IMG/VR virus record: IMGVR_UViG_3300048571_000088
Location: 1 to 64,000 of that record
Direction: 5' to 3' (one strand)
Length of the DNA stretch: 64,000 nt
Under the pieces are notes generated by a model that was not told the DNA's origin, ran no database searches, and saw nothing but the letters and a program-made list of their open reading frames with translations. The translations under genes were made by a program, and so were the position numbers. This document shows positions 768 to 62,669 of the stretch, in pieces; position 1 is the first letter of the stretch, and each line of letters starts with the position of its first letter.

Positions 768-2444
768 TTATACCTCTATAATTAAATTGTGTTTAAAACC
801 ATTATTATTTTGTTCATTGCAATAGCCCAAAGGGTTAATAACAAATCTTGTTTCATCTACTACTGTATCAATAGCTGTATGAGTATTACCCGTTAAAGAA
901 ATTTTATTATTTCTTCTCATAATAAAATTTTCATTTTTAATTGTAATACACCAAAAAGGTTCATTTTTGACTGTAGTTTTATCATGGTAAAAACTAGGAT
1001 GATTGATTGCAGTAGTTGTTTTTTCAACGATATAAAGTTGATACTGAGGTAATTTTGAAAACCCATGATTTAATCTTACTTGAATTGAACAACTATAGCC
1101 ATTAATAGTACTTAAGTAAGACAGTATTTCTTTTTCTGATTTTTTAGCGGTGTAAATAGCTGTGCCATTACCTCTAATACTTCCATCTGTTTGCTGATAA
1201 GTCTTGAGAATAATTTCAAATTGTTTTTTATTACATTTTAAAAGCTTATTATCCAACCCTTTAATATTCCAGTCAGCTAGTTCGTCAGGTAATGTAAAAT
1301 TTATACTAGATCTACCATTTAAATCACACGTGTAGTCAAAAACTCTATACATTATGTTTAATTCATTAAGTAAAGATTTAATATATTCTTTTTTTCTATT
1401 TTTATTGAGACTAAATCTAACAAGATTGCTATTACATAACGACCCATCGGCTGCAATAGCAATGTAAAGCTCTAGTAACTTATCAGTAAGATTAATTCCA
1501 GGATTTTTAAACATACCAGCCCTAATAAAAGTAAATGCGGATTTTCTTGCAGCTAATTTTTCTGCCGTCAATACTGTATACTTATTATTTATCAACCCGA
1601 CCATACGATGAAGACTAGTAACTCTTTGATTAATAATTCCGTTATTAAATTCATAAACATCTCCTGTATACGACATGTCAGTAATTTTAATAATACTTTC
1701 TAAATCTATTAGTTTTGTTTCTTTATTATATGTATAAACTTTATCAGAAAGCAACAGATCTTTTCTAAATTTCCAACCACTCTCAGTGAGAATTTCGGTT
1801 TCTAAATCCACACAGTGTCCGTTTAGCACTAAACTAAATCCAGTACAGTCTAAATCATTAATAAAATAAGGATTAAGAAGCTTTCCTGTCGGGTGATTAG
1901 CCCAATAAGGATCTAAACAACATTGATGTAAAGGAAAGTGAGTCACTACGATTGTATTTGGCTTGTTTCGATATTGTTGAATCCAATTCCAATCTTTATT
2001 AAAGAATGTAATGTAATCATTTGGAGTAACTAGTCTACCCTTATATCTAATACAATAAAAATCATTAACACATTGTTTTGCATTTAGTTTATTTATGTCT
2101 AGTTGGTAGGGATTTGAATATTCTAGTTTGTTTTGATGAAAGTTTGTCCATAGGGTTCCTCCTACAAAAGTATATCCATTATGATTATACTCTTTTCCTT
2201 CTGTGAGGTAGTTGTAACCCTTGGAATGGAGTTCTTTATAGACATCTTCCATGTCATTGTTGTAGAAGTCATGATTACCTAAAACAAATACATAGGGTTT
2301 TTTAGCTTCTTTACATTTATTGACAAACTCGTCTATGTATTTAAATTCGCCATTACTTGCATCCCCGCAGTGGATTATAAAATCTGCATCGAGATTCAAA
2401 GTGTACGGATACGTATGAGTATCACTTATTAATTGTATCTTCAT
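768..2444 (-). CDS. Calcineurin-like metallophosphoesterase interrupted by an intein
   Basis: Motifs SDTH, HCGD, GNHD and VVTH are present; the final GHTH motif is split as NGH|C...GN|THT by a 310-aa insertion. Confidence 0.9.
   Translation of the reverse strand: MKIQLISDTHTYPYTLNLDADFIIHCGDASNGEFKYIDEFVNKCKEAKKPYVFVLGNHDFYNNDMEDVYKELHSKGYNYLTEGKEYNHNGYTFVGGTLWTNFHQNKLEYSNPYQLDINKLNAKQCVNDFYCIRYKGRLVTPNDYITFFNKDWNWIQQYRNKPNTIVVTHFPLHQCCLDPYWANHPTGKLLNPYFINDLDCTGFSLVLNGHCVDLETEILTESGWKFRKDLLLSDKVYTYNKETKLIDLESIIKITDMSYTGDVYEFNNGIINQRVTSLHRMVGLINNKYTVLTAEKLAARKSAFTFIRAGMFKNPGINLTDKLLELYIAIAADGSLCNSNLVRFSLNKNRKKEYIKSLLNELNIMYRVFDYTCDLNGRSSINFTLPDELADWNIKGLDNKLLKCNKKQFEIILKTYQQTDGSIRGNGTAIYTAKKSEKEILSYLSTINGYSCSIQVRLNHGFSKLPQYQLYIVEKTTTAINHPSFYHDKTTVKNEPFWCITIKNENFIMRRNNKISLTGNTHTAIDTVVDETRFVINPLGYCNEQNNNGFKHNLIIEV
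885..1814 (-). mobile_element. Intein with LAGLIDADG-type homing endonuclease domain
   Basis: Begins CVDLETEILTESGW (block A), has VTSLHRM (block B) and LAGLIDADG-like YIAIAADGS and TYQQTDGS, and ends FWCITIKNENFIMRRNNKISLTGN followed by Thr+1. Confidence 0.9.
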
Positions 2445-5272: not shown

Positions 5273-6331
5273 TTAGTCTTTAACTTTTAGTAGGTAACGA
5301 TTACTAATTACTTTAAATCGTAAATCTGTACTAAGTGATTTAAATACCAAACCTTCCCTGTATTTACCAGACAAGCCAGATTCACCGTCTGCTTCTTTAA
5401 GTAATAACTCTAATAATTCTTCTTTTGATAGTGTATCAGATTTACTAAGTTGTTTTAAAGTAAGATTTTGCATGTATACTGGAACATAGTTTAACCCTAA
5501 CGTTAAACACATAAGTTCTGCATCAGTAGGTACCATATATCCAGCAGTATTAATATTATATACACTGTAAATATAAAGTAGTGGCTCTTTAACTCCTTCA
5601 AAGTTACTTTGAATTTTAGGGGACACTAGTTCCCCTTGAAAGGCAAATCCGTTTGGAATTACATTAAGAACTGGTTTGCCGACTAAATTAAAAGGTGACT
5701 GAGACTCCAAAGGAATCTTTAAATTACGAGAACAAACAGACTGCAATTCATCACTATTGATTACTGTCGTTGAGCTACCATCTAATTTATAAGAGATTTC
5801 AAACACTTCGTCATTTAAGTAAGCACTGTATACTTCATTTAAACAATTCTGTAAACGTTCTAAATCTGTTTTAGGTACTAAGTAAGAAGGGAAACGTGAT
5901 CCACTAGTTTGATTGTCAATTGATGTTTCTGGCTTTTCATACTTACAAATCAATAAGTATTCAGTTAAGTCAGCACCAATCTCAAGACTATTAAAATAAT
6001 TTTGTTGTTCTTCGTTAAAACAAGTTAAAGGAACGCAATATCCTTGAGATACTTGACCGCGCAATTTAATTGTCTTAATTAAATAGCCACTAACGGAATC
6101 ACCATTATCTGTTTGAGTAGTGCGTAAAGGAAGCTTATTTAAGTCAGACTCGTAAGGTTCTAGTTGAGGACACAGACTATCGACTTCATGATAGATGCAC
6201 TTATGACCGACTTGGTACAAGCCTTTTCCAACCACTACTTTCCAACCACGAACAGTTGCTACTTCAATCTTATCCGCTTCAGGAATAGATTGCAGATCTA
6301 AGATTGTTTCTAGTGTTGCTAATTTTCTCAT
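5273..6331 (-). CDS. RNA ligase, DRB0094 family (Rnl2-like)
   Basis: N-terminal OB module (RKLAT...ADKIEVATVRGWKVVV, KLRGQVSQG); ligase motifs KLDGSS, QGEL, REGLVFK and FKVISN. Confidence 0.9.
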   Translation of the reverse strand: MRKLATLETILDLQSIPEADKIEVATVRGWKVVVGKGLYQVGHKCIYHEVDSLCPQLEPYESDLNKLPLRTTQTDNGDSVSGYLIKTIKLRGQVSQGYCVPLTCFNEEQQNYFNSLEIGADLTEYLLICKYEKPETSIDNQTSGSRFPSYLVPKTDLERLQNCLNEVYSAYLNDEVFEISYKLDGSSTTVINSDELQSVCSRNLKIPLESQSPFNLVGKPVLNVIPNGFAFQGELVSPKIQSNFEGVKEPLLYIYSVYNINTAGYMVPTDAELMCLTLGLNYVPVYMQNLTLKQLSKSDTLSKEELLELLLKEADGESGLSGKYREGLVFKSLSTDLRFKVISNRYLLKVKD

Positions 6332-24698: not shown

Positions 24699-25427
24699 TC
24701 ATAATCTACTTGTTTCGTAATAGAACCTTTACATTAGTGTGAGGTAGCCTATTGTTTTCCTACTAAATACTATACTTACTTTAAGTAGATTACTTAAACT
24801 TTATAATGATATGCAAAAATAAGGGGAAAATTATCTTTACGATCAATAAAGAAACTTAAAGATAAAATCTTTAATACTTCTTCTTGTTTTACACCTTCAA
24901 TAGGATAATTATCTACACAATAATATTTATAATTTTTAGTAATAAGACTAGTAATATTATTTTTAGAAATATCCATGACACCTTGTTTAAGATTCTTAAT
25001 CTGTTCCGCATAGTCTGGAAATTCATTATCAACAAATTCAAGACTGTGTAAATTAAAGGTTAAATCTGGATAGCAATAACTTGCAAATAAGTATTCATTT
25101 TTAAAAATTAAAGTATTATCAATACTACAATCATGACTATCTAAAAATTCTAAAACATCAGACCATGTCTCAAAAGAAATTGGTGTCTTATTAGTGGTAC
25201 TAATTGAATACATTAACCATCCCAACCTTCACTAGGAATTGGTGTTGGACGTGGTTTTGAACGATCTTTATTACTCATAATTCTTTCCTTTCTTTTAATT
25301 AAGAATTCTTTAGCTTCTTTTTGAATGATTTCTGTGGGTCGTATAGTACAGCCATCATACGATGAAGGATCTGTAAGTAAAACACTATGTGTTTGTTGTT
25401 TCATTTTTAATCCTTGTAGTATAAATT

Positions 25428-25483
25428 CAGAATACTTTTTGTTTTATAAACTATATAAATTTTAAATTTGCTGTTAGTATTCT
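25428..25483 (-). ncRNA. ACAGCAA module RNA, open form (copy B)
   Basis: UAA-AGAAUACU-AACAGCAA ... AGUAUUCU-G. Confidence 0.65.
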
Positions 25484-25490
25484 TTATGTA

Positions 25491-25566
25491 GTAGACGCTG
25501 GACTCGAGCCAGAAATACTATTTCGAGTGCACGATTATTAGTCGTGGCTACTAGGTTTACGTCTAT
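25491..25566 (-). pseudogene. Degenerate tRNA-like sequence (D arm lost)
   Basis: UAGACG/CGUCUA acceptor, CACGA-CUAAUAA-UCGUG arm, CUGG-CUCGAGU-CCAG T-like arm. Confidence 0.5.
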
Positions 25567-25788
25567 TTAAGATTAGTTAATACTTTTTATTTTATAATCT
25601 CTTCAAGGTAAAACCAATTATCTTCGTAATCATTAAATCTGCCACCGCCATTTAGAACATGTTGCATTCTATTTTCTGGTACGTCGCAAGCTAAAAGTTC
25701 TTCTTTTGTTGGTTTTTGCAGCCAACAATCAATAAAGTAATAGCCATGTTGATTATAATCATTTACAGCTTCTGTAAGAACCCAGACG

Positions 25789-26016
25789 TTAGTCATGTTC
25801 AAATTCTTCTGGTTCAGGGGCATTTCTGAGTTTGTATTTATAAACAGATTCAGTTAATGCTCTTTTAACTGTTCTTGGTAACTTACTAGTACGTTGCCTA
25901 ATAGTAGCTTTTGTTGTAACATTTCCTACCCATTCAGGTGGAATTTCTACAAGTTTCCCACGGCGTTTTCTGTACTTAGTGTTTTCTTCTGCTGAATTAG
26001 TTACCAATGAGGTCAT
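25789..26016 (-). CDS. Small basic protein, paralogous to the C-terminus of ORF 41471..41926
   Basis: YRKRRGKLVEIPPEWVGNVTTKATIRQR vs YRNRRGKLVQVPPKWVNNFTTKETIRQR. Confidence 0.7.
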   Translation of the reverse strand: MTSLVTNSAEENTKYRKRRGKLVEIPPEWVGNVTTKATIRQRTSKLPRTVKRALTESVYKYKLRNAPEPEEFEHD

Positions 26017-26376
26017 ACTCTTTCAGTCTCTCAATAAAATTATTAACACTTAGGTTGTTATTTTTACAATATAACTCAATTTCTTCAAATATTTCATCAA
26101 GCTCTAGTTCATGAATGTGAACTTCTTCAAACATTACTGTATTAAAAGTAATATCCCCAAAACCTTCTAGATAAACAATAGAACTCCAACCACCTACATC
26201 CAAACCAGTTACTTTATATACTTGATCTGCAACTAAGTGTTTATTTGCACGTTCGTTATCGAGTTCTGTGCCGTGTTTTCCTAAGTACTTCACTGTAGTA
26301 ACTCTATCACTAAGTTTCATTTATCTTCCTATGTTTATAATATAGTTTATTTAATTATATAAGTCAAAATTTAAGT

Positions 26377-26436
26377 CAGATTACATTCAATTATTAAATA
26401 AAAAGTTTAAATTTTGAAGGTTGCTGTTAGTAATCT
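26377..26436 (-). ncRNA. ACAGCAA module RNA, open form (copy C)
   Basis: UAA-AGAUUAC-UAACAGCAA ... GUAAUCU-G. Confidence 0.65.
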
Positions 26437-26441
26437 TTAAT

Positions 26442-26563
26442 TGGCCGAAAGAGTAGGATTTGAACCTACGTGTGCCGGTTCCCATTATAATATTTGCTGT
26501 TAATATTTTTTACAAAATATATTCATATATTACCGGTGCCTTACCAGACTTGGCTATCTTTCG
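26442..26563 (-). ncRNA. tRNA body (Pro-like) with permuted ACAGCAA module inserted in the anticodon loop (copy F)
   Basis: CGAAAGA/UCUUUCG-G-CCA acceptor; intact D and T arms; the CCGGU/ACCGG stem encloses AUAUUUU-GUAA-AAAAUAU-UAACAGCAA; the loop ends UGGGA. Confidence 0.8.
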
Positions 26564-27838
26564 ATTTATGTTTTATATTTAAAATGAATTACCTTATATA
26601 AAGCTAAAGTGTCAGTTAAGGGTGCTTTAAATAAATCTATCCCAAAAAGATTTTTTAGTTACTTTATTAGTGTGTATTATTGTATTAGTTTCTAGTATAT
26701 CTTCTTTTTGTTCTTTTATTTTAAAACTTTGAATAATCTGTTGTTGTTTTAAAGAAGCTTGTTTATTTTTTGCTAAAACGTAAGCAAGATAAATTTTTTC
26801 ACCTTGTTTTTCAGAAAAAACAGTCTCTCTTGACCCGCCAAAATAAACTTGAGTAATTGATTTATCTGCGATAGCTGACCAATATTCAATTTTAGGTTTA
26901 CATTTTATACTATAAAATGTAAAAGTTTCAAATACCCATTCATGAGAGTTATTAATTAAACTATCACAAAGTTTTTCTACAGTTTCGTCCATTACAGAAT
27001 AATCTAACATTTTAAAAAGTCATCCAATCAATAAATTTATTTTTAAAAGATTTTTTAATAGTTGTTTGTGGTTTAGTCTCTAATTGTTCGATAAAAATCG
27101 TTTCCTTTTGAATAGATTGATCTTTGTCTTTTCTGTGACTTAAAGAGCTAGGAGTAATATAAATAGAACTTAACCAAGTTTCAAACCAGTTGTAATATTT
27201 TTGATAACGCTCATCAAATAAAATATCTGCTTTAAATAACATTCCTTTTTGAATATCTTCTTTCCACATAGAAAGAGTAATATCCATATTGTGTTTACAC
27301 CAATAGAAACCATTGTTAGTGTTAATTGGTACACCAGAGCTTTCATGATTGTACATTAAAAGCTCATCTTCTTTAGTATAAGTTAATTTTGAATTATTAT
27401 CCATTTTAAATAGTAGATAGATATCCTTCATAAATAACCAATCACTAGAAGGTTTTTTAGCGTATTTAAAAATCTCTAGATCTTTGATATACGCAGATAA
27501 AGATTTTTTAGTGTATATATTTGAAATAATACAATAAGGGTTTTCATCGTATTGTAATTGTTCTACTAAAGATAAATTATCAAAATTTTCTTGCTCAAGT
27601 AAATAAGGCGTAGAGTAGTCTTTATTTTTATATACTAGTTTCATATTATTAAAAAAACTCTGCATCTTCAACAGTCGGAGCTTGAATAAACTCTAAAATA
27701 AGTTCAGAAGCTTGTTCAGAACTAACAATGTTATGATTACTACTAGCAGTTATAGAATCAATGGCGCAGTTATTTTCTGCTAAATATTCTTGAAGTGTTT
27801 TAATATAGGACATTTTAATACCAAATTTAATTGAATTG

Positions 27839-27958
27839 TCAGAACGGCAGGGTTCGAACCTACGTCTCTATCTCCCAAAGATAATGTTTAAGAGTTGCTG
27901 TTTGTATTCTTTACAGAATAACTTAACTAAGCGCTTTAACCGACTAAGCTACGTTCTG
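27839..27958 (-). ncRNA. tRNA-Pro(UGG) body with permuted ACAGCAA module inserted 5' of the anticodon arm (copy G)
   Basis: CAGAACG/CGUUCUG acceptor; D arm; insert containing UAUUCU-GUAA-AGAAUA-CAAACAGCAA; then UAUC-UUUGGGA-GAUA and the T arm. Confidence 0.8.
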
Positions 27959-28009
27959 AATGATTTACTATGTTTCTTTATAATTGTTTACTTCTATTAA
28001 GTAGTAAAT

Positions 28010-28083
28010 TGGTTGGACTGGAAGGTACTGACCCTTCTTCAACAGATTAAAAGTCTATTGCATCACCTTAATGCTTCAATCCA
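28010..28083 (-). tRNA. tRNA-Lys(UUU)
   Basis: UGGAUUG/CAGUCCA-A-CCA, AUAGA-CUUUUAA-UCUGU; atypical T loop GUCAGUA. Confidence 0.8.
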
Positions 28084-29813
28084 AAAATGCTTGAACTCAC
28101 AAGCTGTTAAGTCCTATTGTAAAATAAATTACAATCCCTTAAATCTTATAGTAACTACTTTAGTGTATACATAATGCTCTACAATAATTTACTATCACGT
28201 ATACGTCATAAACCTACATGCTGATAATAGTAATATATTTTAGAAGTTCTATTGTGTCTTGAGTTACGGAAGGCTTGTCGTCTACGCATACAGCCATTTT
28301 AATTTGTTTGTTGAGACATTCTTAAGGCAGCAATAATACCATCAATATGTGAAATATCACAAGAAAATAATCTATCCATTCCATAATGCTGTACTGGACC
28401 ATCATATACATGAATAATATTATCTTTTTGATATACATACCAACCAGCTCTTTTAGCTACTTTAATACCAACACCACCAAACGGATCAGGAAAAGTTTCT
28501 CCTTTATGAAAAACCCACTTTTCAAGAAGGATGCGCATATCATAATATTCATCTTGTGTCATGTTTAATCCTTATTAACTACTTTAAAAAATAAATTTTC
28601 ATCTATAATATTAGAATGTAAATAAAGACGTAAGTTATCTGGAAGATTACTAGCACAGGCTAAATGCACTTGAAACGCTCGATCTACCATATCCCACTTA
28701 TAAAAAGCATAAATATCTTTGACATCTAAAACTACATCATATACGTAGTGAGCATCACACCCAAAAGTAAATTCTAAAGCATTTTCAAAATTAGTAATAA
28801 AGTCTTTAGATTCCTGATCTTCAAATAGATCTTTCATAATCCAACGTTTAATCATTGTAGCTTCTTTATAGTTATTTATTTAATAAGACTGTATAAATTT
28901 TAATAATATTTTTTAAGTTGTCATAGTGTCCGATTAGTTTTAGTTTCTTAGTGTTACTAATAAAACTTCCTTTACCATGCTTGGAATCTAATTTATTTCT
29001 ATCAAAGGGAGAAAATTCAAACTTCATATCTAATTTTGAATTTTTAAATTCTTTTCTAATTGTAAAATCAATATCATTTAATTCAGCTTTAGTATAATAC
29101 AATCTACATCTTTGTTTAAATCTTTGTATTGCATGGTTTGTTACAAATACTTTTTCAGTATTTGTTATATGAAATCTAACTTGATGCATACAGAATCCTT
29201 TTATACTTATTGTGTTATTGACTTGTAAGTAAAATTAATGCCAAGGAATTAAAGTTTCATATTTAAAATTTATTTGTCGCTCAGGTACTAAATCATTTAA
29301 AAATGTAATGTTATTAAGATTAAGTACAGCAGTAGGCAAACCATGCATATCTAGGTTCCAATCTACAAAAGTATTTGGAATTTGTTGTGCAGTAGACTCT
29401 ATTGTTAGTGTGCCAGTTTTTAGTTTTGAATCAAACTCAAGCATGTGACAACTCAAGTTAATACCATCTTTTCTAAGGCGTATGAAAGAACCTGCTAGTT
29501 TTGTATATTGTTGTTTCATATTAATCCTTTATTTTAAAAGTAAAAAGGTGGATGTACAAGAAGTACAATTAATCATTTTCCAAAATAAACAAGTTTTAAA
29601 ATAAGAAGAATACATATTTAAAATAGCTTTATCTTGTACTACATTAGTATCTTCATTCTTACAATAGACACACATATAGTTTGGATCTACTTCTGGTTTT
29701 GTTCTGCCAAAAGGAGAAGGTTTCCAGTTTTCTAGAGAGTAGTATTGAAAAGATACTTGAAGTACTTCATTAGGTTTTGGTAAATACATAATTAAACCTT
29801 ATTATATAAATTG

Positions 29814-29898
29814 TCCTTCCTCTCGGACTCGAACCGAGACTGCCTTTCGGCGCAGGTTTATGAAACCTGTGGATTTAAACCAATTCTCCCAAGGAAGG
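29814..29898 (-). tRNA. tRNA with CAU anticodon (Met/Ile2) and long variable arm
   Basis: CCUUCCU/AGGAAGG-A, CAGGU-UUCAUAA-ACCUG, extra arm GCC-GAAA-GGC, canonical T arm. Confidence 0.85.
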
Positions 29899-30596
29899 AA
29901 TAAAAATAATTATTTAATAACAATAAATCATAGAACCACTATTTCAATATTGTTATTACAGGTTAATTGGAACCTCCAGTTTTTAATTAACTTCATCATA
30001 ATCTTGGTACTGCAACCAACGGTAGGTGCTAATTAAAGCTTCTTACATTCGTAGCCTACTTCCGAACTACTACCCAAGTGGCTAATTGGGAGGTCATGAT
30101 TTTAATTTAAAATATTTTATAAATCTTCTTTTTTAACTACTTTAAAATGATCTTCATCGTATAATTGATTTTTATAATTAATTTCATTCTGTATTTTAGT
30201 CTCTTTCGTATGGTCTGTCATAAGCCTATTATACAAATAAATGGCACTTGGCTTATCATATTTTAAAAATGACTTAGACATATTTCTACTCCAAGAATAA
30301 GATAAAGTCCAAAAATCTACATAACCATAATCAATATAACGTCCAAGGTAAGCAACTGAATAAAATTCCCCTCTATTAATAATAGTTGGAATTTTTGGAT
30401 CAATATTTTGTAATTCTTGCGGTATAAAGTTTTCTTTTTTATCGGAATACTTTTTTACTGCCAGTAATATCAGAAATAAAACAAGAATGAGGAAAGCTAA
30501 AGTACACATTATTTTAATCCTTGCATAAAAGTTTAAGAAGTAAAGAATAGTATTGGATTGTTCGGTACATGTTAATAATCTTTGAACTACTTTTAA

Positions 30597-30717
30597 CAGA
30601 TTAGTATTTTTATCAAGTGGATTCGAACCACTGCCTTTTTTGAGTCAACAAAAACGCTCTAACCTCTAAGCTATGTTCCCTAATGGCGGGAAAGTTTAAA
30701 TTTGCTGTTACTAATCT
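30597..30717 (-). ncRNA. ACAGCAA module RNA, open form enclosing tRNA D, anticodon and T arms (copy D)
   Basis: UAA-AGAUUAGUA-ACAGCAA ... UAGCUUAGAGGUUAGAGC ... AGUGG-UUCGAAU-CCACU ... UACUAAUCU-G; no acceptor stem or CCA. Confidence 0.8.
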
Positions 30718-30723
30718 TTAATG

Positions 30724-31296
30724 TTATTTAATAGAGTTTGCACTAACAAACATATAAATAATATTCATTTCTAGTTCATCAATCAGATTATGAGCTTGGT
30801 TGATTAGCCTGTATTTAATTACTTCTCTGACTTCCATAAGAACAGAACCTAAAAAATTAAGTCCATTCCATTGGTTTGAATCTAAAATTAAAGGATCATC
30901 TGCGGAAAGACCTACACCCCAAATACAATCTACAGGGGATGCCTCTACAAGAAATAAACCATCAGTATCTGACAGTTTTTTTGTTAAATCTTTGTCAGTA
31001 GTAAATTTAAGATAATTTACTTCGTACATTATTTGATAACTTACTTTAGACCATTCTGTGTCTGAATAATTCTTTACGTTTCTTCCTAGTCTTTTAGCAG
31101 TATAAGGATCTTCTGCCTCGTGAATCAATCTCATACTTTCTGTATCTTTAAAGAATTCAGCTTTACGGTACATAAACATATGTTCTGTAGTATAGAAAGT
31201 TAATCCGTTATAGATAATTCCTTTAGGAATATCATGAAAATTACTAAGAAAATTTGTTAAGAAGTAATAATGAGTATCTGTTTTTAAATTATTCAT
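30724..31296 (-). CDS. NADAR (YbiA-like) family protein
   Basis: FLSNFH, TTEHMFMYRKA, AKRLGR, LVEASPVDCIWGVG and GLNFLGSVLMEVRE. Confidence 0.92.
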   Translation of the reverse strand: MNNLKTDTHYYFLTNFLSNFHDIPKGIIYNGLTFYTTEHMFMYRKAEFFKDTESMRLIHEAEDPYTAKRLGRNVKNYSDTEWSKVSYQIMYEVNYLKFTTDKDLTKKLSDTDGLFLVEASPVDCIWGVGLSADDPLILDSNQWNGLNFLGSVLMEVREVIKYRLINQAHNLIDELEMNIIYMFVSANSIK

Positions 31297-31996
31297 TTTC
31301 TGTTTCTAGAATTAAGTTATTAGTTGCTTGATTAAAATTATAAAGTAGACGATCTAAACCAAAAGCAATCTCCAGTACAAAATGATCAGAAGAAAAATCA
31401 GTTCGTTTTGAAACAGAGCAAACTTCCATCCATTTGTCACCATTGTTTACTTCAATATCTAAAGTATTTAAGGAATAAGAAGGTAATCTATCACTAGTAA
31501 CAATACGAGTTGGTAGTTTTAATAGTTCAAGTACTAGATTACCTAAGTCTTTAATAACATTTTCTTGATATTCATTTTTCGTACTAATTGAATAAATACA
31601 TTGAAATTCAAGTTGAAAAAACTCTTTAAATCGACAATGTTTTGTTGCTTGGTCTTGTTCTTTACGGAAAGACTTTGAAGCTTGAAAAACACACAAAGGT
31701 GGTTTGTGACTTAAAGTTAATAATTGGTTTGCATACGCATAGCTTAAAGCAGTTGTTTCTGGCTTTAAAGATAATGTATCTGAAATTTTAAAATAATCAG
31801 ACTCTGAATACTCAGGGTTAATTTGATCATTACTAATCAAACAACTCCCTTCAATCTCATGAAAACCCCAAGCTTTATTTTGACTACGTAAGATGTTTTT
31901 AACACCTAAAGTAATAAATTGTTTGATAAAGTTTCGAATTAAAATATCTTTTTCATTGTAAGCAACAATGCCATTAGTATTTGTCAAACTAAGCAC
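31289..31996 (-). CDS. Truncated class II aminoacyl-tRNA synthetase catalytic domain (GlyRS-like)
   Basis: LKPETT, motif 2 KSFRKE...RFKEFFQLEFQ, YS..TLDIE, WMEVCSVSKRTD, motif 3 LEIAFGLDRL; the protein ends shortly after motif 3. Confidence 0.8.
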   Translation of the reverse strand: MLSLTNTNGIVAYNEKDILIRNFIKQFITLGVKNILRSQNKAWGFHEIEGSCLISNDQINPEYSESDYFKISDTLSLKPETTALSYAYANQLLTLSHKPPLCVFQASKSFRKEQDQATKHCRFKEFFQLEFQCIYSISTKNEYQENVIKDLGNLVLELLKLPTRIVTSDRLPSYSLNTLDIEVNNGDKWMEVCSVSKRTDFSSDHFVLEIAFGLDRLLYNFNQATNNLILETENE

Positions 31997-33476: not shown

Positions 33477-33917
33477 TTAAGAATTTTTAAATAATTTTAA
33501 GTGTTTTGTAATTGCATCGATCTTGTCATCTGAGCAAGGACCAATAGCTACTACTGTAGGAGTTTTAATACCGTTAAATACAGTGTGTCCATTATCTACG
33601 ATATAAGAACAAGGTAACTTAGCTTCTAAGGCTTTGTTATAAAGACTGAGTAATTCTTCTTCACTGTTTACAGTAAGACAAACTTTCTTTTGTTCACCTG
33701 TTAGCCAGATATGTAAAGCATCACTTGAATAGCAATCTAACTCTCGAAAAACAGCATAAGAGTCAGGAGATTCGTCTTCACCTTCTGTATAAGAATACAT
33801 TAAATTAGTAATAGCTGTAAGAGATCCGTGAGCAACTTGAGCTGCAACTTTACCAACAGGCATATTAAGGTCAGAACGAATTAAGATTACTTGCTTAGTT
33901 TTCATTTTTATTTTCAT
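33477..33917 (-). CDS. pth2: Peptidyl-tRNA hydrolase, Pth2 type
   Basis: KQVILIRSDLNMPVGKVAAQVAH, QKKVCL, IVDNGHT, TVVAIGP and IDAITKHLKL. Confidence 0.92.
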   Translation of the reverse strand: MKIKMKTKQVILIRSDLNMPVGKVAAQVAHGSLTAITNLMYSYTEGEDESPDSYAVFRELDCYSSDALHIWLTGEQKKVCLTVNSEEELLSLYNKALEAKLPCSYIVDNGHTVFNGIKTPTVVAIGPCSDDKIDAITKHLKLFKNS

Positions 33918-44460: not shown

Positions 44461-44549
44461 TGGTGGGTGAGGTGGGATTCGAACCCACAATGACTTTCGT
44501 CTTATTTGTTATGAGCAAATCGCACTTCGACCAATATTGCTGCTCACCC
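44461..44549 (-). tRNA. tRNA with CAU anticodon (Ile2/Met) and long variable arm
   Basis: GGGUGAG/CUCACCC-A-CCA, AUUUG-CUCAUAA-CAAAU, extra arm GAC-GAAA-GUC. Confidence 0.88.
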
Positions 44550-45783: not shown

Positions 45784-46251
45784 TTAAGGAAGGGTTTTAG
45801 TAAGTATCGTACTAGAAGTAAATAAAGAATCAGGTAATTTTCCAATTGTAATGTGAAATGGATAATCACTAGATAAACCTAATTTTTTTCTAATACAATC
45901 TAACTCAGTTGAGTGTACTCGCAAGGCATAAAAACGCCAATGACGGTACACTCTAGGATCACATTCAACTTTAAATTGTTTGTTTTTAATTTGATTTAGA
46001 AACTGTTCATTTCTTTTTATATCAATCTTTTGACGTCCATCTGCAATTGTAATATGAGCACCAAAAGGTGGTAATTCTAAAACCACTCCGTACTGTTTGT
46101 AAACTAAAGAAGAATATAATTTAGCAAAATCATTAGAGACTTTGCCAATAATTAGCTCTTCTTCGTAGTTTCGTTTTTTATTTTTAATACGGAGTCTACT
46201 TTCAGGGAATACTTCAATTTTAGTTGAAATTGTAAAAAGATTTGATGTCAT
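45784..46251 (-). CDS. 2H phosphoesterase family protein
   Basis: Two HxT motifs: GAHITI and PFHITIG. Confidence 0.8.
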   Translation of the reverse strand: MTSNLFTISTKIEVFPESRLRIKNKKRNYEEELIIGKVSNDFAKLYSSLVYKQYGVVLELPPFGAHITIADGRQKIDIKRNEQFLNQIKNKQFKVECDPRVYRHWRFYALRVHSTELDCIRKKLGLSSDYPFHITIGKLPDSLFTSSTILTKTLP

Positions 46252-62594: not shown

Positions 62595-62669
62595 GCACCA
62601 GTTGCAAGAATCGAACTTGCTATCTCTTCACAATTTTCTTGTGAGTGCTCTACCTTGAGCTACCTGATG
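62595..62669 (-). pseudogene. Degenerate tRNA-like gene
   Basis: Good D arm (GCUC-AAGGUA-GAGC) and T arm (GCAAG-UUCGAUU-CUUGC); imperfect acceptor; abnormal anticodon arm UCACAA-GAAAA-UUGUGA. Confidence 0.55.

What the first reader, a model, noticed from the sequence alone, without database searches (positions are those of the whole stretch)
27839..27958. tRNA-Pro(UGG) with the module inserted at the D-arm/anticodon-stem junction
Seen: the anticodon arm UAUC-UUUGGGA-GAUA is retained and the ~47-nt insert lies 5' of it, near position 27/28. Precise removal would restore the stem CUAUC/GAUAG of a canonical tRNA-Pro. The insertion site differs from copy F, suggesting independent acquisition (inference).
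Basis: partly seen in the sequence, partly recalled or inferred. Interest (0 to 1): 0.72.

Follow-up and report, generated by a model that had tools for sequence, protein, structure and literature searches.

The report
Phage tRNA-Pro carrying a Y-RNA-like arm
A jumbo-phage proline tRNA gene is interrupted by a 47-base structured RNA module that recurs beside phage genes for a Ro60-like RNA-binding protein, so it is probably a tRNA fused to a "Y RNA" handle, not an ordinary intron or a broken gene.

Summary
On the minus strand, 27958 to 27839 is a tRNA-Pro(UGG) gene (Rfam 45.7 bits) with a 47-nt insert (27930-27884) between positions 27 and 28. Deleting it gives a perfect 73-nt cloverleaf.

The insert is one copy of a conserved RNA module: a 7-8 bp stem (P1) with compensatory changes, then an almost invariant single-stranded ACAGCAA.

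The module has two topologies:
- Closed: a capped hairpin inside tRNA genes.
- Open: half-modules flanking a small anticodon-like hairpin or a circularly permuted tRNA.

In 7 of 8 unrelated contigs fetched only through a protein (PF11443+PF25043), the module lies directly upstream of that protein's gene, on the same strand. Three of these contigs were unseen by the model. The eighth has only weaker copies 4-6.5 kb away. The window encodes this protein at 36191-37663, and its predicted fold is Ro60/TROVE+vWA. RNA ligase genes sit nearby.

Best reading: a divergent phage Y-RNA system, with this gene as a tRNA-Pro/Y-RNA chimera.

Whether the arm is kept or later cut out and the tRNA re-ligated is unresolved. 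One metatranscriptome contig shows only the unspliced form. No splicing endonuclease or RtcB gene was found, and there is no BHB motif.

The parts
27839..27958 (-). tRNA-Pro(UGG) gene with internal module (120 nt)
   Evidence: Rfam RF00005 45.7 bits; cloverleaf after in-silico removal
27931..27958 (-). 5' part of the tRNA (positions 1-27): acceptor 5' strand, D arm, G26, C27
   Evidence: sequence read
27884..27930 (-). 47-nt insert, made of a 5' segment (27930-27921), the P1 hairpin UAUUCU-GUAA-AGAAUA (27920-27905), the J strand CAAACAGCAA (27904-27895) and a 3' segment ending UUAAACAU (27894-27884)
   Evidence: closed-form alignment A3 with P1 92% paired and 4 compensatory pairs
27839..27883 (-). 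3' part of the tRNA (positions 28-73): anticodon stem-loop UAUC-UUUGGGA-GAUAG, T arm, acceptor 3' strand, A73
26445..26563 (-). second tRNA-Pro-derived gene with a closed module (26531-26487) in the anticodon loop; after removal the loop is AAUGGGA (A33, non-canonical); CCA is encoded
   Evidence: Rfam 46.2 bits
43773..43878 (-). tRNA-like gene with a closed module; P1 is identical to the one in the tRNA-Pro gene
   Evidence: Rfam 25.6 bits; R1 hit
40587..40712 (-). tRNA-like gene with a closed module (J = ACAGCAU)
30595..30719 (-). open module enclosing a circularly permuted tRNA-like body: 3' fragment UUCCC-G-CCA, 3-nt linker, then positions 1-67; junction 67/68; non-canonical anticodon loop
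   Evidence: (E 7.5e-6)
26375..26438 (-). open module with a small hairpin payload, just 3' of the 26445-26563 gene
   Evidence: R1 62.6 bits
25426..25485 (-). open module with a small AU-rich payload, 3' of an unannotated tRNA-like sequence
   Evidence: R1 55.6 bits
23201..23350 (-). possible open module with a 120-nt non-tRNA payload (weak)
   Evidence: R1 E about 0.6-0.9
36191..37663 (-). Ro60/TROVE+vWA-like protein (PF11443 DUF2828 + PF25043), the proposed protein partner of the module
   Evidence: AF2 model pLDDT 85; Foldseek top 13 hits are all Ro60/TROVE, E 3e-9 to 2e-5
5273..6331 (-). PHA02142-OB + RNA_ligase (DRB0094-type, 5'-P/3'-OH nick sealing by family knowledge)
768..2444 (-). 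calcineurin-like phosphoesterase, a candidate RNA end-healing enzyme
45784..46251 (-). 2H phosphoesterase-like ORF (26.2 bits, just under Pfam's cut-off of 27)

Best explanation
The 47-nt insert is a closed (hairpin-capped) copy of a conserved phage RNA module: a 7-8 bp stem P1 whose outer end reads A-AG...CU-G, followed by single-stranded (U/A)(A/U)ACAGCAA. This module is the RNA partner of a divergent phage Ro60/TROVE-vWA protein, encoded in this window at 36191-37663. In other words, it is a Y-RNA-type protein-binding handle. The gene at 27839-27958 is therefore a tRNA-Pro(UGG)/Y-RNA chimera: a complete tRNA body with a Ro60-binding arm leaving the 5' strand of the anticodon stem.

Shown:
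- The tRNA anatomy.
- The module family, with covariation in P1.
- Its two topologies.
- Its restriction to the tRNA region of this genome.
- Its systematic position directly upstream of Ro60-like genes in unrelated phages.
- The Ro60-like predicted fold.
- The linkage of that gene to RNA ligase genes.

Inferred:
- That the protein binds P1/J.
- That the RNP tethers a tRNA-shaped RNA to the Ro60-like protein and the neighbouring RNA-repair enzymes (ligases, phosphoesterases), as proposed for bacterial Rsr/YrlA/RtcB.
- That the arm is part of the working RNA rather than being removed. This last step is the weakest; I put retention at about 60:40 over later removal.
For: Anatomy:
- tRNA anatomy.
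- P1 covariation in the open form: 100% of cells paired, 5 of 7 pairs with compensatory changes, 0/500 shuffles reach the covariation score.
- P1 covariation in the closed form: 92% paired, 4 compensatory pairs.
- Copies in this genome lie only at 23-44 kb.

Association with the Ro60-like protein:
- An all-against-all comparison of this phage with five otherwise unrelated module-bearing contigs shows very few shared proteins. The DUF2828 protein is one of only two shared with 3 of the 5.
- Its model matches Ro60, Rsr and Thermus phage phiLo Ro60 over the full length: TM 0.45-0.58, E 3e-9 to 2e-5.
- Contigs fetched purely by identity to homologues of that protein carry the module on the same strand, immediately upstream of the gene: L247, L251, L252 and L253, and L374, L375 and L376. 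The last three were not used to build model R2; their hits have E 2e-5 to 5e-6 and lie 10-130 nt from the start codon.
- G002 has three modules upstream of its copy.
- L374 has a tRNA-Arg(UCU) with a closed module at 26/27 inside such an array.

Linkage to RNA ligases:
- The Ro60-like gene sits next to RNA_lig_T4_1 and PHA02142+RNA_ligase genes.

Precedent from papers:
- Bacterial and phage Y RNAs lie next to Ro60 genes. They have a 5'/3' stem plus a tRNA-like domain in T arm-acceptor-D arm order, and one is cut by RNase P and receives CCA (PMC4201824).
- phiLo Yrl1 and Yrl2 lie upstream of its Ro60 gene (PMC12135203).

Payloads are a mix of true and degenerate tRNAs:
- Permuted payloads have the same T arm-acceptor-D arm order.
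- Some are perfect tRNAs (Asn GUU, Thr UGU). Others are degenerate mimics (A33 in the second Pro gene). This fits mimicry better than a need to make working tRNAs.

Other:
- Junctions cluster at positions 26-30.
- The only RNA contig over 5.5 kb is the unspliced gene.
Against:
- The module lacks the known Ro60-binding motifs (GGUCCGA, GNCGAAN0-1G, CGAA), and no Rfam family matched.
- The tRNA-Pro gene keeps features a mere mimic would not need: C1:G72, A73, G35, G36, G37, U33 and a perfect 5-bp anticodon stem after removal. With a 47-nt arm in the anticodon stem it could hardly work on a ribosome (inference), so a decoding role would require removal.
- Junctions in the acceptor stem (67/68, 68/69), with CCA encoded inside a closed loop, are awkward for a fixed RNP architecture.
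- Modules upstream of the gene could instead be a cis-regulatory leader of its mRNA.
- In this window the nearest module is 3 kb from the Ro60-like gene, not adjacent.
- The PF11443 family is very large (over 5,900 hits), so some co-occurrence is expected by chance.
Confidence: 0.55

Rival explanations
1. The insert is a true intron of a new, protein-assisted kind. The module is cut out at the base of the pairing between its 5' and 3' segments, and the tRNA halves, held together by the cloverleaf, are sealed by a phage RNA ligase. The open form is then a natural 'permuted intron-exon' arrangement that circularises permuted tRNAs, which RNase P and 3' trimming then open at the encoded CCA, as in Cyanidioschyzon permuted tRNA genes. 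The Ro60-like protein would be the module-recognition or trimming cofactor.
For: - Removal restores canonical tRNAs exactly: Pro UGG here, Pro UGG in L030 and His in L010.
- Un-permuting gives perfect tRNA-Asn(GUU) with CCA and tRNA-Thr(UGU).
- Most junctions lie inside stems, where a nick-sealing ligase works best by family knowledge.
- The phage encodes a DRB0094-type ligase, a metallophosphoesterase and a sub-threshold 2H-like ORF.
- Ro60-like genes sit beside RNA ligase genes.
- The same module occurs as an insert and as a leader/trailer pair, the pattern known for BHB introns and permuted tRNA genes.
- Both tRNA-Pro genes of the phage carry the module and no uninterrupted one was found.
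Against: - No spliced RNA was seen (contigs only).
- No EndA and no RtcB, and no BHB at the junctions (sequence read).
- Some payloads would not be working tRNAs even after joining: the 6-nt loop at 30595-30719, the truncated anticodon arm in L020, and A33 in 26445-26563.
- Many open modules enclose only a 10-45 nt hairpin, or nothing, which splicing does not explain.
- The endonuclease is unknown.
Confidence: 0.3
2. The insert is a selfish miniature element that hopped into tRNA genes and inactivated them; the interrupted genes are decaying pseudogenes.
For: Near-identical P1 and J in the copies at 27839-27958 and 43773-43878. The sites differ between copies. Some host tRNAs look degenerate.
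Against: - P1 is kept by compensatory changes across unrelated phages.
- The tRNA-Pro exons are intact.
- Relatives at 95-99% identity keep the insert.
- The module is tied to one protein family.
- An RNA contig covers the gene while the flanks have none.
Confidence: 0.06
3. The module is a small self-cleaving ribozyme or an RNase processing signal (RNase P, III or E) that trims neighbouring tRNAs, like the theta ribozymes of gut phages.
For: Open copies start 0-6 nt after tRNA 3' ends. The flanks A|AG and CUG|UU are invariant. ACAG of J is complementary to CUGU at the 3' end of P1, so an alternative pairing is possible (sequence read). DRB0094-type ligases are enriched in theta-ribozyme phages (PMC10879173).
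Against: No Rfam ribozyme family matched even at E up to 1. There is no G1, catalytic C or GC-rich pseudoknot as in HDV-like ribozymes. A cut in the closed copies would split the tRNA. This reading does not explain the link to the Ro60-like gene.
Confidence: 0.07

Closest known systems
Bacterial and phage Y RNAs of the YrlA type with Ro60/Rsr (Chen et al. 2014, PMC4201824; phiLo Yrl1/Yrl2, PMC12135203)
   Same: The RNAs are encoded beside a Ro60-fold protein gene, often in tandem and upstream on the same strand. A stem is formed by the 5' and 3' ends, next to a conserved single-stranded motif. The tRNA-like domain is in T arm-closed acceptor-D arm order. There is precedent for RNase P cutting and CCA at the acceptor. 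The genes are linked to RNA ligase genes.
   Different: The conserved motif is ACAGCAA, not GNCGAAN0-1G, GGUCCGA or CGAA. The protein belongs to PF11443, not the annotated TROVE family. Payloads can be complete tRNAs with real anticodon loops, or just an anticodon-like hairpin. The closed topology, with the handle as a capped hairpin inside an otherwise normal tRNA gene as here, is not described in the papers read.
BHB introns at non-canonical positions and permuted tRNA genes (Archaea, Cyanidioschyzon merolae)
   Same: One motif serves both as an insert at varied positions and as the leader/trailer of circularly permuted tRNA genes with short linkers.
   Different: No bulge-helix-bulge. No splicing endonuclease or RtcB in the phage. 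The host is presumably bacterial. Splicing is not shown.
'Enigmatic' tRNA introns of Lak megaphages (Devoto et al. 2019, PMC6784885)
   Same: Phage tRNA genes are interrupted by short structured inserts with no Rfam hit; a UUAAAC motif occurs near the 3' part.
   Different: Lak inserts are 79-114 nt, sit at 37/38, and contain an acceptor/T-arm minihelix. They lack ACAGCAA.
Theta (minimal HDV-like) ribozymes next to phage tRNAs (PMC10879173)
   Same: Small structured RNAs directly 3' of phage tRNAs; co-occurrence with DRB0094-type RNA ligase.
   Different: No HDV-like fold or catalytic C, and no Rfam HDV hit. This module also occurs inside tRNAs and beside Ro60-like genes.

Membership tests
Y RNA (Ro60 partner RNA, YrlA-like) | Encoded next to a Ro60/TROVE-fold protein gene | tested here: met
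   The protein has a Ro60 fold. A module lies directly upstream on the same strand in L247, L251-L253, L374-L376 and G002. In this window the nearest copies are 3-6 kb from the gene.
Y RNA (Ro60 partner RNA, YrlA-like) | Stem formed by the 5' and 3' ends, with a conserved adjacent motif | tested here: met
   P1 has compensatory changes. ACAGCAA is nearly invariant. In the gene of the finding the stem is capped (closed form).
Y RNA (Ro60 partner RNA, YrlA-like) | Known Ro60-binding sequence (GGUCCGA / GNCGAAN0-1G / CGAA) | tested here: not met
   The motif is absent from the module. No Rfam family matched at E up to 1.
Y RNA (Ro60 partner RNA, YrlA-like) | tRNA-like domain | tested here: met
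   A full tRNA-Pro here; permuted tRNA or tRNA-like payloads elsewhere.
Y RNA (Ro60 partner RNA, YrlA-like) | Physical binding to the Ro60 protein | not testable with these tools
   Complex prediction did not fold the protein-RNA pair.
BHB-type tRNA intron / permuted tRNA gene | Bulge-helix-bulge at both junctions | tested here: not met
   The first intron bases (UUAG...) are not complementary to the first exon-2 bases (UAUC); no 3-4-3 motif can be drawn (sequence read).
BHB-type tRNA intron / permuted tRNA gene | Splicing endonuclease and RtcB-type ligase available | tested here: not met
   PF01974 and PF01139 are absent from the 242.6-kb genome. The host was not examined.
BHB-type tRNA intron / permuted tRNA gene | Spliced or circular product exists | tested here: inconclusive
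   Only an unspliced 192-nt contig in one metatranscriptome. Contigs drop rare forms, and mature tRNAs are poorly captured.
Group I intron in tRNA | Catalytic core of 200 nt or more, with P3-P9 | tested here: not met
   The insert is 47 nt; no Intron_gpI hit.
Theta / HDV-like ribozyme | Nested double pseudoknot with catalytic C; cleavage 5' of G1 | tested here: not met
   No HDV-family hit in Rfam. The module starts A-A-G and is AU-rich, without a P3/P1.1.
Lak megaphage tRNA introns | Insert at 37/38 with an embedded acceptor/T-arm minihelix | tested here: not met
   This insert is at 27/28 and has no T arm. ACAGCAA is absent from the Lak intron table.

The most novel reading that the evidence does not exclude
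The module is a genuine, removable tRNA intron of bacteriophages. It is recognised by a Ro60-like protein and resolved by host nucleases plus phage RNA ligases. Its open form is then a natural permuted intron-exon device that makes working tRNAs from circularly permuted genes. That would be a third, protein-assisted tRNA splicing system, outside Archaea and Eukarya.
Probability: 0.25. Interest if true: 0.92.

Novelty: new variant of a known kind. Interest (0 to 1): 0.74.

Why it matters
- Ro60 and Y RNAs are well known, but what the tRNA-like half of bacterial Y RNAs does is still open.
- Here a very large phage protein family (over 5,900 relatives, filed only as a domain of unknown function) acquires a predicted Ro60 fold and a candidate RNA partner with a simple, searchable signature.
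- That partner is fused to whole tRNAs, to permuted tRNAs carrying CCA, or to bare anticodon hairpins.
- This gives a direct experimental handle on how phages couple a Ro60-type ring, tRNA shapes and RNA ligases, most plausibly in the contest over tRNA cleavage and repair.
- It also explains a class of 'interrupted' phage tRNA genes that gene finders miss or mis-call.
- If the arm proves to be excised, it would be a new kind of tRNA splicing.

Tried and rejected
- **BHB intron:** no motif at the junctions; no EndA or RtcB.
- **Group I intron or known small ribozymes** (hammerhead, hairpin, twister, pistol, hatchet, HDV): no Rfam hit at E up to 1 over 22-46 kb. A weak Dicty_Class_I hit at 25428-25482 only reflects the P1 stem.
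- **Phage promoter or spliceosome-like GU...UACUAAC-AG signal:** dropped once P1 covariation and the open/closed relation were seen.
- **ARAGORN on every 47-nt deletion:** too permissive to discriminate; the same was true for L374.
- **Closed-form pattern scan of IMG/VR:** only one true extra copy, L010; the rest were chance hits in coding sequence.
- **Search for intron-less orthologues:** a neighbouring protein, the 5' half of the tRNA (other isoacceptors only) and the 3' half gave none.
- **RNA ligase in five module-bearing contigs:** found in only 1 of 5, but all are 12-71% fragments, so this is uninformative.
- **Prokaryote genome scan:** 0 of 120 pattern hits has a P1 partner.
- **RNA runs:** none listed for the 5.5-kb stretch; one metatranscriptome found with the shorter query.
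- **Complex prediction of protein plus module:** not folded.
- **Literature:** no paper found on permuted tRNA genes in phages or on DUF2828 function.

Full report
**Setting.** The window is the first 64 kb of a 242,588-bp IMG/VR virus record with 100% estimated completeness. It is about 29% G+C and is densely packed with short ORFs on the minus strand. DNA runs that hold it come from freshwater metagenomes. It reads as a jumbo phage. The region from 22 to 46 kb is a tRNA region.

**The observation.** The gene lies on the minus strand. Rfam's tRNA model matches 27839-27958 over all 71 model positions at 45.7 bits (threshold 29), with one long insertion in the anticodon arm. Reading the sequence gives three parts:
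- 27958-27931 holds the acceptor strand CAGAACG, U8 A9, the D arm GCUU/AAGC with GG in its loop, G26 and C27.
- 27930-27884 is a 47-nt insert.
- 27883-27839 holds UAUC-UUUGGGA-GAUAG, the T arm GUAGG-UUCGAAC-CCUGC, CGUUCUG and A73.

The boundary can slide by one U. With the insert removed, ARAGORN draws a 73-nt tRNA-Pro(UGG) in which all stems pair, with U33 and G37. By family knowledge, C1:G72, A73, G35 and G36 are the bacterial ProRS identity set, and all are present. ARAGORN also accepts many other 47-nt deletions, so I do not count that test as discriminating.

**The insert belongs to a family.** On the minus strand the insert reads: a 5' segment, the hairpin UAUUCU-GUAA-AGAAUA (P1), CAA-ACAGCAA (J), then a 3' segment ending UUAAACAU. 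The same hairpin plus ACAGCAA sits inside three more tRNA-like genes of the window: 26445-26563, 43773-43878 and 40587-40712.

The sequence AAAG-AWUAY-UA-ACAGCAA also occurs between tRNA genes, at 26438, 25485 and 30719. There its AGAWUAC pairs with a GUAWUCU 30-100 nt downstream rather than upstream. So there are two topologies of one structure:
- Closed: P1 is capped by a GNRA-like loop (GUAA, GAAA, GACA, or the 5-nt GAAUA), and the module is an insert.
- Open: the P1 3'-half, J and the 3' segment lead a payload, and the 5' segment and P1 5'-half trail it.

Covariation supports P1:
- In 21 open copies from many phages all cells pair, 5 of 7 pairs show compensatory changes, and 0 of 500 shuffles reach the covariation score. 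The slid controls collapse. These copies were picked partly by requiring complementarity, which inflates the percentage paired. However, of 126 unique hits to a pattern that ignores the partner strand, 18 had a perfect partner where 3.6 were expected from shuffled stems.
- In 7 closed copies 92% of cells pair, with 4 compensatory pairs.

ACAGCAA and the outer A-AG...CU-G are nearly invariant. A covariance model places copies in this genome only at 23-44 kb. The module looks virus-restricted: none of 120 hits to the same pattern in prokaryote genomes has a partner strand. No Rfam family matches it.

**Payloads.** Some open modules enclose circularly permuted tRNAs.
- In the window, 30719-30595 reads: module half, UUCCC-G-CCA, a 3-nt linker, positions 1-67, module half. 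Rejoined, ARAGORN draws a 76-nt cloverleaf with CCA but an odd anticodon loop.
- Elsewhere, rejoining gives a perfect tRNA-Asn(GUU) with CCA (L253) and a tRNA-Thr(UGU) (L014). L020 has a truncated anticodon arm.
- Other open modules enclose only a 4-6 bp hairpin with a 7-nt anticodon-like loop. CUUCCAA appears in three phages with different stems; CUUUUAA, CUGUUAA and AUUGGGU also occur. One encloses just 10 nt.
- Closed copies in other phages interrupt a tRNA-Pro(UGG) at 29/30 (L030), a tRNA-His-like gene (L010) and a tRNA-Arg(UCU) at 26/27 (L374).

Junctions cluster at 26-30. The others fall in the anticodon loop and at 67-69.

**The protein link.** I compared all ORFs of this phage with five module-bearing contigs that are otherwise unrelated. 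Very few proteins are shared, and the ORF at 36191-37663 (PF11443 + PF25043) is one of only two shared with three of the five. Its AlphaFold model (pLDDT 85) matches Ro60, D. radiodurans Rsr, a TROVE-domain crystal structure and the Ro60 of Thermus phage phiLo over its full length, then vWA domains. Sequence search against PDB found nothing. The family has more than 5,900 relatives.

I then fetched eight contigs solely by identity to diverse homologues of this protein.
- Seven of the eight carry a module on the same strand in the non-coding gap just upstream of the gene.
- Three of these seven (L374, L375, L376) were not used to build model R2. Their hits have E 2e-5 to 5e-6 and lie 10-130 nt from the start codon.
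- The eighth, L249, has only weaker copies 4-6.5 kb upstream.
- These contigs range from 31 to 48% G+C, and P1 changes accordingly (for example GGGUUGC/GCAACCC).
- In L374 the upstream array is: open module, tRNA-Arg with closed module, open module, gene.
- The gene is often next to RNA ligase genes: RNA_lig_T4_1 and PHA02142+RNA_ligase.

This phage has a PHA02142+RNA_ligase ORF at 5273-6331, plus a metallophosphoesterase, Macro and NADAR domains, and a 2H-like ORF just under Pfam's cut-off.

**Comparison with what is known.** Bacterial and phage Y RNAs are encoded beside Ro60 genes. They have a stem made from the two ends with a conserved motif, and a tRNA-like domain in T arm-closed acceptor-D arm order. 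M. smegmatis YrlA is cut by RNase P and receives CCA (PMC4201824). phiLo has two Y-like RNAs upstream of its Ro60 gene (PMC12135203). Jumbo phages are noted to carry TROVE proteins as part of RNA repair sets (PMC7824862).

The open module with a permuted tRNA has exactly that layout. What differs:
- the motif (ACAGCAA rather than GNCGAAN0-1G or CGAA);
- the protein family;
- the completeness of some tRNA payloads;
- the closed topology of the gene in question, which is a normal tRNA gene with the handle as an internal hairpin.

After RNase P cutting, a permuted copy and a closed copy converge on the same shape: a tRNA with a free acceptor end and an arm leaving positions 26-30.

**Is the arm removed?** Evidence for removal:
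- the exons are a flawless tRNA-Pro;
- both tRNA-Pro genes of the phage carry the module;
- junctions lie mostly in stems, where a nick-sealing ligase could act;
- the insert/permuted duality mirrors BHB introns.

Evidence against removal:
- no BHB, no EndA and no RtcB;
- several payloads could never be decoding tRNAs;
- many modules have trivial payloads.

RNA evidence is thin. One freshwater metatranscriptome has a single 192-nt contig (depth 7.3, no mismatches) over 27763-27953. It covers the unspliced gene from about 5 nt inside its 5' end to 76 nt past its 3' end. The rest of 25300-30800 has no coverage. So the unspliced RNA exists and is more abundant than its neighbours, but contigs cannot exclude a spliced form. 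Related strains at 95-99% identity keep the insert.

I rate the Y-RNA-type handle as the best-supported identity of the module. Retention is somewhat more likely than excision. A hybrid, in which the Ro60-like protein assists excision and ligation, is a live possibility.

**Limits.**
- Binding is inferred from gene neighbourhood and fold only.
- The model E-values are rough because calibration was shortened.
- The P2 pairing between the insert's two end segments is AU-rich and not statistically supported.
- The host is unknown.

Noticed in passing
window 37735-37843 (-): tRNA-like gene (Rfam 38.3 bits) with anticodon loop CUAAAAA and a roughly 35-nt variable arm. It lies 72 nt upstream of the Ro60-like gene, the place where other phages carry modules.
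   Followed up: partly
window 29813-29898 and 44461-44549 (-): Two tRNA(CAU) genes, each with an extra GAAA-capped hairpin in the variable region. A TilS-like PP-loop ORF (35449-36093) is nearby, which suggests one may be read as Ile.
   Followed up: no
window 25490-25560 (-): Unannotated tRNA-like sequence (acceptor, anticodon arm CACGA-CUAAUAA-UCGUG, T arm with CUCGAGU loop, poor D arm), missed by ARAGORN and Rfam, directly 5' of the open module at 25426-25485.
   Followed up: partly
window 31289-31996, 33477-33917, 33924-35075, 30724-31296 (-): A cluster of translation- and stress-related ORFs inside the tRNA region: a class II aaRS-core-like fragment, PTH2 peptidyl-tRNA hydrolase, TelA, and a NADAR domain.
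   Followed up: no
window 27971: A related strain in DNA run X4 carries a 12-nt insertion just 5' of the tRNA-Pro gene. The insert itself is kept in all three relatives.
   Followed up: no
L374:5773-5887 (+): tRNA-Arg(UCU) with a closed module at 26/27 (P1 GGAGCUU-GACA-AAGCUUC), sitting between two open modules directly upstream of a Ro60-like gene in a 45% G+C phage. Its outer P1 pairs are A-U where the consensus has G-C.
   Followed up: partly
L251:9920-9985 and L252:9924-9988 (+): Module variants with J = UCAGCAA or CCGCAA share a conserved payload, GUCUGCUAGGAC..UAAACUAG. This may be a distinct subfamily.
   Followed up: no
L247:9820-9965 (+): A tRNA with a roughly 70-nt insert in its anticodon loop that lacks ACAGCAA lies between an open module and the Ro60-like gene. 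It may be a second kind of handle.
   Followed up: no
module J and P1 3' end (e.g. window 27898-27901 vs 27912-27915): ACAG in J is complementary to CUGU at the 3' end of P1. Both are invariant, so an alternative pairing or a switch cannot be tested by covariation.
   Followed up: no
window 62595-62668 (-): ARAGORN calls a tRNA-Phe(AAA); Rfam gives only 24.9 bits, below threshold.
   Followed up: no
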